Assembly: GCF_040938485.1 (NCBI RefSeq)
Contig: NW_027271379.1
Coordinates: forward strand, 1 to 64,000
Length of the DNA stretch: 64,000 bases
Direction: 5' to 3'
Source of the DNA: Diadema antillarum
Lineage: Eukaryota
Below are positions 535 through 61,629 of this stretch, piece after piece; positions within the stretch are counted from its first letter, which is position 1, and every line of letters starts with the position of its first letter. The position numbers and the translations under genes are program-made. The notes beneath the pieces were generated by a model. It was not told where the DNA came from and made no database searches. It saw only the letters and a list, made by a program, of their open reading frames with translations.

Positions 535-674
535 CCGGCAGTGTGAAGTAGAGGTCATCCACCATTCTCATGCCCAGATCCAGTCTACCTATAATGGGGT
601 GCAGGTAGTCCGGCCAGATGGTCAGGTTCATGATTGTCGGGGCAACGGCATCAAACACCATCTTCATGATCGCA
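535..674 (-). CDS. Exon B14 (140 nt, phase 2-1), last exon confidently seen
   Basis: aaacag|...|gtaaat; AIMKMVFDAVAPTIMNLTIWPDYLHPIIGRLDLGMRMVDDLYFTLP. Confidence 0.85.

Positions 675-61629: not shown

What the first reader, a model, noticed from the sequence alone, without database searches (positions are those of the whole stretch)
535..61629. Giant ABCA-like ectodomain built from at least 14 tandem four-exon modules
Seen in sequence: 58 exons form a repeating A(0-2)/B(2-1)/C(1-0)/D(0-0) cassette of 573-699 nt (module 12 is longer). They give about 3,020 aa with many N-glycosylation sequons and no transmembrane or ATPase segment, and the array is open at both window ends. Established knowledge: ABCA1/2/4/7 carry this ECD1 segment (LKLQDFLVDNETFSGFL..NLSLP..VDKML followed by LCN...ELC) once. 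The enlarged vertebrate ABCA12/ABCA13 ectodomains are not, to my knowledge, known as a regular four-exon tandem array. Inference: this is an ABCA transporter whose lipid-conducting ECD1 segment was serially amplified at least 14-fold, an architecture I do not recognise as described.
Basis: partly seen in the sequence, partly recalled or inferred. Interest (0 to 1): 0.9.

Follow-up and report, generated by a model that had tools for sequence, protein, structure and literature searches.

The report
Giant ABCA transporter with repeated lid modules
This sea-urchin DNA encodes about 3,000 residues of the outer domain of a giant lipid-transporter-type (ABCA12/13-like) protein, built by copying one small "lid" module about fifteen times in the window; such proteins sit unnamed in many invertebrate gene sets, and I found no paper describing the repeat design.

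Summary
I rebuilt 58 minus-strand exons (61629 to 535) that repeat an A(0-2)/B(2-1)/C(1-0)/D(0-0) cassette of 573-699 nt. They give open reading stretches of 2,602 and 399 aa. There are 59 N-glycosylation sequons against 18 expected, and no membrane or ATPase segment.

The window is the first 64 kb of a Diadema antillarum contig. The next exon starts 448 nt from the end of another contig. It opens a 2,530-aa partial ABCA model with two membrane domains, two ATPase domains and the R1 domain.

Full-length relatives exist: D. setosum (5,667 aa) and a second D. antillarum copy (5,775 aa). Both start with the ABCA LLLWKN/TM1 motif.

The C+D half of the module is homologous to ABCA4 residues 150-237 (E = 4e-7). 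Its predicted fold matches ABCA1/2/4/12 there (TM 0.46-0.70). That stretch lies in the ECD1 "lid", which cryo-EM leaves unresolved.

A quick tree places the gene with vertebrate ABCA12/13, not ABCA1. Proteins with 9-27 modules, up to 7,432 aa, occur across bilaterian invertebrates as unnamed predictions. I found no paper describing them.

This is a new variant of a known kind. The scan also noted exon-limited homogenisation on this same window.

The parts
59768..61629 (-). Module M1, partial. Exons B 61629-61499, C 60848-60718, D 59953-59768. Its A exon lies beyond 64000.
   Evidence: 98% identical to P0206 residues 783-931.
53663..59108 (-). Module M2. A 59108-58894, B 56756-56626, C 55765-55635, D 53854-53663 (669 nt).
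   Evidence: The D. setosum model lacks B and C here. 85% identical to P0206.
47939..52378 (-). Module M3. A 52378-52152, B 51083-50932, C 48702-48572, D 48127-47939 (699 nt).
   Evidence: 97% identical to P0206.
44358..47397 (-). Module M4. A 47397-47294, B 46164-46007, C 45430-45300, D 44546-44358 (582 nt).
   Evidence: Overlaps RefSeq fragment P0017.
40953..43745 (-). Module M5. A 43745-43624, B 43034-42916, C 41898-41762, D 41147-40953 (573 nt).
37897..40488 (-). Module M6. A 40488-40253, B 39660-39536, C 38912-38791, D 38082-37897 (669 nt).
33972..37020 (-). Module M7. A 37020-36833, B 36069-35921, C 34878-34745, D 34166-33972 (666 nt).
30330..33045 (-). Module M8. A 33045-32807, B 32186-32056, C 31621-31488, D 30524-30330 (699 nt).
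   Evidence: In P0206 and P0089 only its A exon is used, joined to B of M11.
27024..29500 (-). Module M9. A 29500-29373, B 28534-28407, C 28112-27979, D 27215-27024 (582 nt).
   Evidence: Absent from the P0206 and P0089 models.
25852..26022 (.). Assembly gap (N run) in the intron between D9 and A10.
   Evidence: Phases match across it (D ends in phase 0, A10 starts in phase 0). Its content is unknown and was not filled.
22546..25774 (-). Module M10. A 25774-25647, B 24900-24773, C 23819-23686, D 22740-22546 (585 nt).
   Evidence: Part of RefSeq fragment P0003. C10 is 131/134 nt identical to C9.
18058..20898 (-). Module M11. A 20898-20771, B 20042-19912, C 19018-18885, D 18252-18058 (588 nt).
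   Evidence: Exons B, C and D are 99% identical to P0206 residues 2315-2468.
14087..17420 (-). Module M12. A 17420-17293, B 16390-16260, C 15713-15592, D 14293-14087 (588 nt).
6723..13148 (-). Module M13, the long one. A 13148-12946, extra exon B' 11763-11635 (phase 2-2), B 10391-10264, C 9641-9524 (cut by the N run), D 6926-6723.
9372..9523 (.). Assembly gap (N run) that removes the 3' end and the donor of exon C13.
   Evidence: Orthologues leave room for about three codons. Not filled.
3138..5786 (-). Module M14. A 5786-5578, B 4992-4862, C 3931-3810, D 3335-3138.
   Evidence: 99% identical to P0206.
535..2158 (-). Module M15, partial. A 2158-1965, B 674-535. The contig ends 534 nt further on. 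The next exon is on contig JBFRCO010000645.1.

Best explanation
Shown. The window holds 58 internal exons, about 3,040 codons, of one very large gene of the sea urchin Diadema antillarum. The gene encodes a full ABCA-type ABC transporter of roughly 5,800-6,400 residues.

The window part lies wholly inside the first extracytoplasmic domain (ECD1), between TM1 and the ECD1 base. It consists of 15 tandem copies, 13 complete and two cut by the window ends, of a module of about 195-235 residues. Each module has two exons (A, B) that encode long helices. Two further exons (C, D) encode a compact helical unit with two invariant cysteines about 25 residues apart.

The C+D unit is homologous to the single 'lid' segment at the top of ECD1 in ABCA1, ABCA2, ABCA4 and ABCA12.

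Inferred. Counting modules outside the window, the whole protein has about 20.

Every module starts and ends in phase 0. Unequal crossing-over or skipping of whole modules therefore keeps the frame. This explains how the array grew and why copy number differs between species.

On function: the protein is a lipid transporter of the ABCA12/13 type. Its lid has been drawn out into a long, strongly acidic, heavily N-glycosylated helical chain that projects from the ECD tunnel into the extracellular or vesicle-lumen space. That chain most likely multiplies the lid's lipid-holding or hand-off surface, or places it far from the membrane.
For: Exon model and open frame.

Thirteen D exons share two invariant cysteines.

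Window identity: its position 1 is the end of contig JBFRCO010000491.1.

Downstream continuation: P0207 starts exactly at the residue after the window's last exon. Its gene starts 448 nt from its contig end. It carries the ABC domains.

Full-length relatives: P0089 (D. setosum, 5,667 aa) is collinear with the window. P0206 (D. antillarum, 5,775 aa) is 93-99% identical per module for all but M2 (85%) and M8-M11. Both have the LLLWKN/TM1 start.

Lid homology: ABCA4 residues 150-237 at E = 4.4e-7. ABCA1 has one copy at 3e-14. Sauropsid ABCA12 has one copy by hhalign, probability 82%. Foldseek TM by query is 0.58-0.70 to ABCA2/4/1 and 0.46-0.54 to ABCA12.

ABCA4 residues 138-271 are the unresolved apical lid (bioRxiv 10.64898/2026.06.25.734683).

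Clade: ABCA12/13 plus the invertebrate giants, SH-aLRT 100.

Extracytoplasmic character: 59 sequons against 18 expected, no TM segment, D+E 13.8% against K+R 3.2%.

Module arrays in other phyla: 9-27 copies per protein, about 835 copies in 76 proteins.
Against: No transcript of this species was seen.

The two full-length Diadema models join A8 directly to B11, leaving out 12 of the window's exons. The mature protein may therefore hold fewer modules.

The join of the two contigs is inferred from exon order and contig ends, not read through.

The A+B part of the predicted structure is of low confidence (pLDDT 54-67) and pTM for two modules is 0.37, so the shape of the chain is unknown.

No solved structure matches the module, so fold homology rests on predicted models.

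The tree was a quick search with a single long outgroup and without ABCA2, ABCA4 or ABCA7.

The functional statement has no direct evidence.
Confidence: 0.9

Rival explanations
1. The array is real, but the usual mRNA does not contain all 58 exons. Three modules' worth (exons B8 to A11) would be skipped cassettes or present only on this haplotype. The common protein would then join A8 to B11, as in the two full-length Diadema models.
For: P0206 and P0089 both pass from the A8 equivalent straight to B11-C11-D11, which match at 99% and 91%. All modules share phases, so skipping keeps the frame. S. purpuratus RefSeq lists 13 isoforms, those listed being 4,848-5,232 aa, that diverge inside the array; one diverges exactly at a module boundary, residue 1564.
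Against: The skipped exons are open and have good splice sites and exon-like G+C. They are 55-76% identical to each other at DNA level with unalignable introns, so they are old and maintained, not assembly copies. RefSeq's own model on this contig (P0003) uses D9 to D11. Gene predictors often drop repeated exons.
Confidence: 0.4
2. The window encodes a free-standing secreted repeat protein that is not attached to an ABC transporter.
For: Within the window there is no TM or ATPase segment. RefSeq annotates the contig as several separate 'uncharacterized proteins'. The 6,292-aa Ptychodera model has no ABC domain.
Against: The array runs off the contig end in mid-module. The very next exon is found at the end of another contig at the head of an ABCA body. 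Full-length orthologues in D. setosum, S. purpuratus, Lytechinus, sea cucumber, sea stars and a crinoid all carry the array and the ABC domains in one protein. The Ptychodera model ends inside a module, so it is probably truncated.
Confidence: 0.03
3. The window copy is a decaying duplicate (pseudogene) of the intact gene on the 2.9-Mb contig.
For: A second, complete copy (P0206) exists in the same assembly. The window copy is split over two contigs and broken into fragments by the annotation.
Against: About 3,000 codons read without a single stop or frame break across 58 exons. Ten of the 15 modules are 95-99% identical to P0206, and the D exon of M13 is 93%. The downstream 2,530 aa are 97.9% identical and complete. 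This pattern fits an alternative haplotype contig, or a very young intact paralogue, better than decay.
Confidence: 0.05

Closest known systems
Vertebrate ABCA12 and ABCA13 (glucosylceramide transporter ABCA12; ABCA13, described as the largest ABC transporter)
   Same: Same clade in my tree (SH-aLRT 100 against ABCA1). Same overall plan: TM1, a very large ECD1, then two TMD-NBD halves and R1. Like this gene, they have an ECD1 enlarged upstream of the canonical lid copy. ABCA13's long N-terminal region is needed for its function and localisation (PMC7948424).
   Different: In vertebrates I detect only the one canonical lid copy. Profile iteration and hhalign find no further copies in the long upstream region. 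That region has repeats of its own with other periods: about 272-275 aa in Clarias, 137-153 aa in gar and about 624 aa in Anolis. The literature says the ABCA13 N-terminal region has no homology to known human proteins and no well-conserved domains (PMC7948424). Human ABCA13 encodes much of it in one 4.8-kb exon (title of Prades 2002, as cited in PMC7948424), not in four-exon cassettes.
ABCA1 / ABCA2 / ABCA4 ECD1 lid
   Same: The C+D half-module is homologous in sequence to ABCA4 150-237 (E = 4.4e-7), with both cysteines aligned, and to fish ABCA1 (3e-14). In predicted fold it matches at TM 0.58-0.70. The ABC body of the sea-cucumber orthologue scores highest against ABCA1, then ABCA4, ABCA7 and ABCA3, among solved structures.
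   Different: These proteins carry the unit once, while this gene carries about 20. The tree places the one fish ABCA1 sampled outside the clade that holds this gene; ABCA2 and ABCA4 were not in the tree.
Unnamed predicted orthologues: XP_072169976.1 (D. setosum), XP_071483826.1 (D. antillarum), LOC100890089 (S. purpuratus), LOC121431427 (L. variegatus), XP_071835863.1 (Apostichopus), LOC119728778 (Patiria), and mollusc, nemertean, brachiopod and horseshoe-crab proteins up to 7,432 aa
   Same: The same module in tandem, 9-27 copies, in front of an ABCA body.
   Different: The window haplotype shows three more modules than the two full-length Diadema models. Sea-star proteins (full-length) and hemichordate models (no ABC domain found) carry a C-type lectin domain after the second module, which echinoids lack. 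None of these entries is annotated as a repeat protein.

Membership tests
ABCA subfamily full transporter | Two ABC_tran ATPase domains and two ABC-2-type membrane domains in one chain, with the ABCA R1 regulatory domain | tested here: met
   None lies in the window itself. They are present in P0207, whose first residue follows the window's last exon and whose gene starts 448 nt from a contig end. They are also present in orthologues P0089 and P0206.
ABCA subfamily full transporter | N-terminal LLLWKN-type motif and TM1 before a large ECD1 | tested here: met
   P0089 and P0206 begin MGVVSQVGLLLWKNLKLMIRNPLLAITQFFWPILIFVVIALV. The matching exons of the window's own copy lie beyond 64000 and were not read.
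ABCA subfamily full transporter | ECD1 lid segment with two conserved cysteines | tested here: met
   Profile A3 against PDB sequences hits ABCA4 150-237 at E = 4.4e-7. The top nine Foldseek matches are ABCA2/4/1/12.
ABCA12/ABCA13 clade | Groups with vertebrate ABCA12/13 rather than ABCA1-like proteins in a tree of the ABC body | tested here: met
   31 sequences, 1,827 columns, LG+G4 quick search, ABCA3 outgroup. The clade of vertebrate ABCA12/13 plus echinoderm plus protostome giants has SH-aLRT 100. This is provisional: ABCA2, ABCA4 and ABCA7 were absent and the outgroup branch is long.
ABCA12/ABCA13 clade | N-terminal extension homologous to that of vertebrate ABCA12/13 | tested here: not met
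   No module copies were found upstream of the canonical one in fish, amphibian, reptile or bird proteins by HMM, five profile iterations or hhalign.
Pfam or other curated domain family for the repeat module | A curated profile matches the module | tested here: not met
   No Pfam family hits the first 3,300 residues of P0206 or the repeat regions of P0001, P0002 and P0073. The precomputed PF26955 is ACT_13 and lies between NBD1 and TMD2.

The most novel reading that the evidence does not exclude
The bilaterian ancestor of ABCA12/13 already carried a tandem array of lid modules. On this reading the unexplained 2,000-3,500-residue N-terminal region of vertebrate ABCA13 and ABCA12 is a remnant of that array, diverged beyond recognition and re-duplicated. 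The well-preserved invertebrate modules would then be the key to its structure and role.
Probability: 0.3. Interest if true: 0.75.

Novelty: new variant of a known kind. Interest (0 to 1): 0.6.

Why it matters
ABCA transporters move lipids, and defects in them cause Tangier disease, Stargardt disease, harlequin ichthyosis and surfactant deficiency. The top of their outer domain, the lid, is the part that cryo-EM cannot resolve, and its role is unknown.

This gene family copies exactly that piece 10 to 27 times. Selection has therefore acted on the lid as an independent, stackable unit. This gives hundreds of natural sequence variants of the lid: about 835 copies in 76 proteins. They could be used for structure determination and binding tests.

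The family also shows that ABC transporters larger than ABCA13 exist, up to 7,432 residues in the predicted set, although a 2026 review (PMC13161189) still calls ABCA13 the largest ABC transporter. It suggests a testable origin for the N-terminal region of ABCA13, which a 2020 paper describes as having no homology to known human proteins and no well-conserved domains.

On the practical side, the finding corrects an annotation. At least five 'uncharacterized protein' models on this contig and one 'ABCA1-like, partial' model on another contig are pieces of one gene.

Tried and rejected
- A profile of the D exon alone against PDB sequences found nothing.
- A two-module profile from a poor 1,479-column alignment gave only chance coiled-coil matches.
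- Foldseek of both models against solved structures found nothing. This is expected if the lid is unresolved, as reported for ABCA4.
- I searched for module copies in the long N-terminal regions of vertebrate ABCA12/13 with a broad HMM, five rounds of profile iteration and hhalign. All were negative apart from the canonical copy.
- Self-BLAST of whole N-terminal regions gave no off-diagonal hits even for the positive control, so I discarded it. I repeated it with 220-residue windows.
- I tried to find the sample behind the long Logan contigs that encode 6,229- and 6,516-aa relatives.
- Five literature searches found no description of repeated-lid ABCA proteins. The library is limited, so absence is not proof.
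- I rejected a free-standing repeat protein and a pseudogene; see the rival explanations.
- I considered fetching the other D. antillarum copy's DNA to see whether it holds modules M8-M10. I did not, because it is another copy of this genome that spans the N runs.

Full report
**What the window is.** One RefSeq protein of Diadema antillarum (XP_071498582.1, P0003, 992 aa) maps to the window at near identity. Looking up its contig showed that the window is the first 64 kb of JBFRCO010000491.1 (677,702 bp, assembly GCA_040938485.1). Window position 1 is therefore a physical contig end. All homology and all exons lie on the minus strand.

**Checking the observation.** A six-frame search found 13 copies of a 62-69-residue open segment, all on the minus strand. 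Each is bounded by a good acceptor and donor in phase 0-0 and holds two invariant cysteines. I placed the other exons using homologous proteins as guides together with a phase-constrained search for AG...GT open exons.

- The result is 58 exons from 61629 to 535.
- The repeating plan is A(0-2), B(2-1), C(1-0), D(0-0).
- Module lengths are 573-699 nt.
- One longer module carries an extra 129-nt exon in phase 2-2.
- The spliced sequence is open for 2,602 codons, then for 399 codons after the first N run. Chance cannot produce this.
- Exons have 54.8% G+C against 39.3% for the window.

**The product and the gaps.** The product has 59 N-glycosylation sequons against 18.3 +/- 4.0 in shuffles. It has no convincing hydrophobic segment and no Walker A or signature motif. 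It is very acidic and poor in lysine.

The N run at 25852-26022 lies in an intron, and the phases on its two sides agree. The N run at 9372-9523 cuts off the last few codons and the donor of exon C13. I filled neither gap.

**What it belongs to.** A profile of the D exons, searched against 1.84 billion proteins, found 65 proteins. The best carry many matches at a spacing of 195-230 residues: 27 in a 6,292-aa Ptychodera protein, 16 in a 6,516-aa protein, and 11 in a 2,497-aa protein of unnamed source (P0002) that is collinear with the window. Others come from crinoid, bivalve, limpet, annelid and horseshoe crab.

Several of these are complete ABCA transporters. A search with the ABC body of the sea-cucumber protein then found full-length relatives:

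- D. setosum, 5,667 aa
- S. purpuratus, 13 isoforms; those listed are 4,848-5,232 aa
- Lytechinus, 5,757 aa
- sea stars, 5,840-6,166 aa
- molluscs, a nemertean and a brachiopod, up to 7,432 aa

The D. setosum protein is collinear with the window from residue 782 to 3157. It starts with the ABCA motif LLLWKN and TM1.

**The rest of the gene in this species.** The cluster of the D. setosum protein holds three further kinds of D. antillarum entry:

- a complete 5,775-aa protein on a 2.9-Mb contig (P0206);
- an 'ABCA1-like, partial' protein of 2,530 aa on contig JBFRCO010000645.1 (P0207);
- small fragments from the window's contig.

P0207 begins with the residues that, in both full-length proteins, directly follow the window's last exon. 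Its gene starts 448 nt from the end of its contig, and the window's last exon ends 534 nt from the end of its own contig. P0207 has two ABC_tran domains, two ABC2_membrane_3 domains and R1_ABCA1. The window array and P0207 are therefore one gene, cut by a contig break inside an intron.

Compared module by module, the window product is 95-99% identical to P0206 for ten of the 15 modules. The D exon of M13 is 93% and M2 is 85%. M8-M11 differ because P0206 skips them. The window is therefore an alternative haplotype or a very young intact duplicate.

**What the module is.** A profile of the C+D half, built from 100 copies in 28 proteins, hits ABCA4 residues 150-237 among all PDB sequences at E = 4.4e-7, with both cysteines aligned. 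Locally it hits fish ABCA1 once (3e-14) and a salamander ABCA13 once (3.6e-8). Sauropsid ABCA12 shows one copy by hhalign (probability 82%).

AlphaFold models are all-helical. The two-module model has pLDDT 71.8, high in C+D and low in A+B. The C+D model has pLDDT 78.4 and pTM 0.67. Against 550,129 AlphaFold Swiss-Prot entries, the nine best matches of the C+D model are ABCA2, ABCA4, ABCA1 and ABCA12. All match at the same ECD1 position, with TM by query of 0.46-0.70.

Solved structures give nothing. This fits the report that ABCA4 residues 138-271, the apical lid of ECD1, are unresolved in cryo-EM. The amplified piece is therefore the lid. Neither the local Pfam library nor the newer precomputed Pfam hits covers it.

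**Placement.** I built a quick maximum-likelihood tree of the ABC body: 31 sequences, 1,827 columns, ABCA3 outgroup. It groups echinoderm and protostome giants with vertebrate ABCA12/13 (SH-aLRT 100). ABCA1 and an amphioxus ABCA1-like protein fall outside.

The long N-terminal regions of vertebrate ABCA12/13 show no further module copies by any sequence method I tried. They do have internal repeats of their own.

**How the array evolves.**

- Most module pairs are 12-28% identical. M8-M11 are 34-67% identical.
- At DNA level the exons of M8-M11 are 54-76% identical and their introns cannot be aligned. They are therefore old copies, not assembly artefacts.
- The exception is exon C of M9 and M10, which is 131/134 nt identical with unrelated flanks.
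- Both full-length Diadema models join A8 directly to B11, leaving out three modules' worth of exons. Because modules begin and end in phase 0, skipping and unequal crossing-over both keep the frame.
- S. purpuratus isoforms diverge inside the array, one exactly at a module boundary.

**Mechanism.** It is shown that this is ECD1 of an ABCA transporter made of repeated lid units. The glycosylation signal and the position between TM1 and TM2 make it extracytoplasmic.

The rest is inferred. The chain would extend or multiply the lid's lipid-holding or hand-off function on a transporter related to ABCA12 and ABCA13. ABCA12 loads lipid into secretory granules. ABCA13 needs its N-terminal region for vesicular localisation and cholesterol internalisation (PMC7948424). 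No experiment bears on this.

**Novelty.** The sequences are public but unnamed. In five searches I found no paper that describes the repeat architecture. A 2026 review still calls ABCA13 the largest ABC transporter and describes its ECD only as abnormally large. I rate this a new variant of a known kind, with moderately high interest.

Noticed in passing
window 49073-49843 and 49937-50704: Two tandem copies, 88-95% alike, of an element of about 770 bp with terminal inverted repeats of about 60 nt. They sit in the intron between B3 and C3 and look like a non-autonomous DNA transposon (MITE-like).
   Followed up: partly
window 7951-8428: A 152-bp tandem repeat, 3.1 copies with 94% matches, in the intron between C13 and D13.
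   Followed up: no
window 28112-27979 versus 23819-23686 (minus strand): Exon C of modules M9 and M10 is 131/134 nt identical. The 200 nt on either side cannot be aligned, and the other exons of the two modules are 67-70% identical.
   Followed up: yes
window 535-46164; contig JBFRCO010000645.1 (L002): RefSeq splits this one gene into at least five 'uncharacterized protein' models on this contig: XP_071498566, XP_071498567, XP_071498574, XP_071498582 and an unnamed 452-aa model. One further 'ABCA1-like, partial' model (XP_071502773) lies on another contig.
   Followed up: yes
P0206 (XP_071483826.1, on a 2.9-Mb contig of the same assembly): The same assembly holds a second, complete copy of the gene. 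For ten of the 15 modules it is 95-99% identical. Whether it is an allele (haplotig) or a young paralogue is open.
   Followed up: partly
P0085, P0096, P0097 (sea stars); P0001, P0076 (hemichordates): In sea-star and hemichordate relatives, a C-type lectin domain sits after the second module (for example Patiria residues 635-743 and Ptychodera 619-721). Echinoid proteins lack it.
   Followed up: partly
P0147 (Clarias), P0203 (gar), P0164 (Anolis) ABCA12 N-terminal regions: Vertebrate ABCA12 N-terminal regions contain internal repeats of their own: period about 272-275 aa at 85% identity in Clarias, 137-153 aa in gar, and about 624 aa at 35-38% in Anolis. They show no detectable similarity to the lid module.
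   Followed up: partly
P0115 and P0005 (Logan contigs of 19,037 and 20,548 nt): These contigs encode 6,229- and 6,516-aa relatives, so coding takes up 95-98% of their length. They are therefore probably assembled transcripts, which would show that such giant arrays are expressed as one mRNA in some species. The source organism could not be looked up.
   Followed up: no
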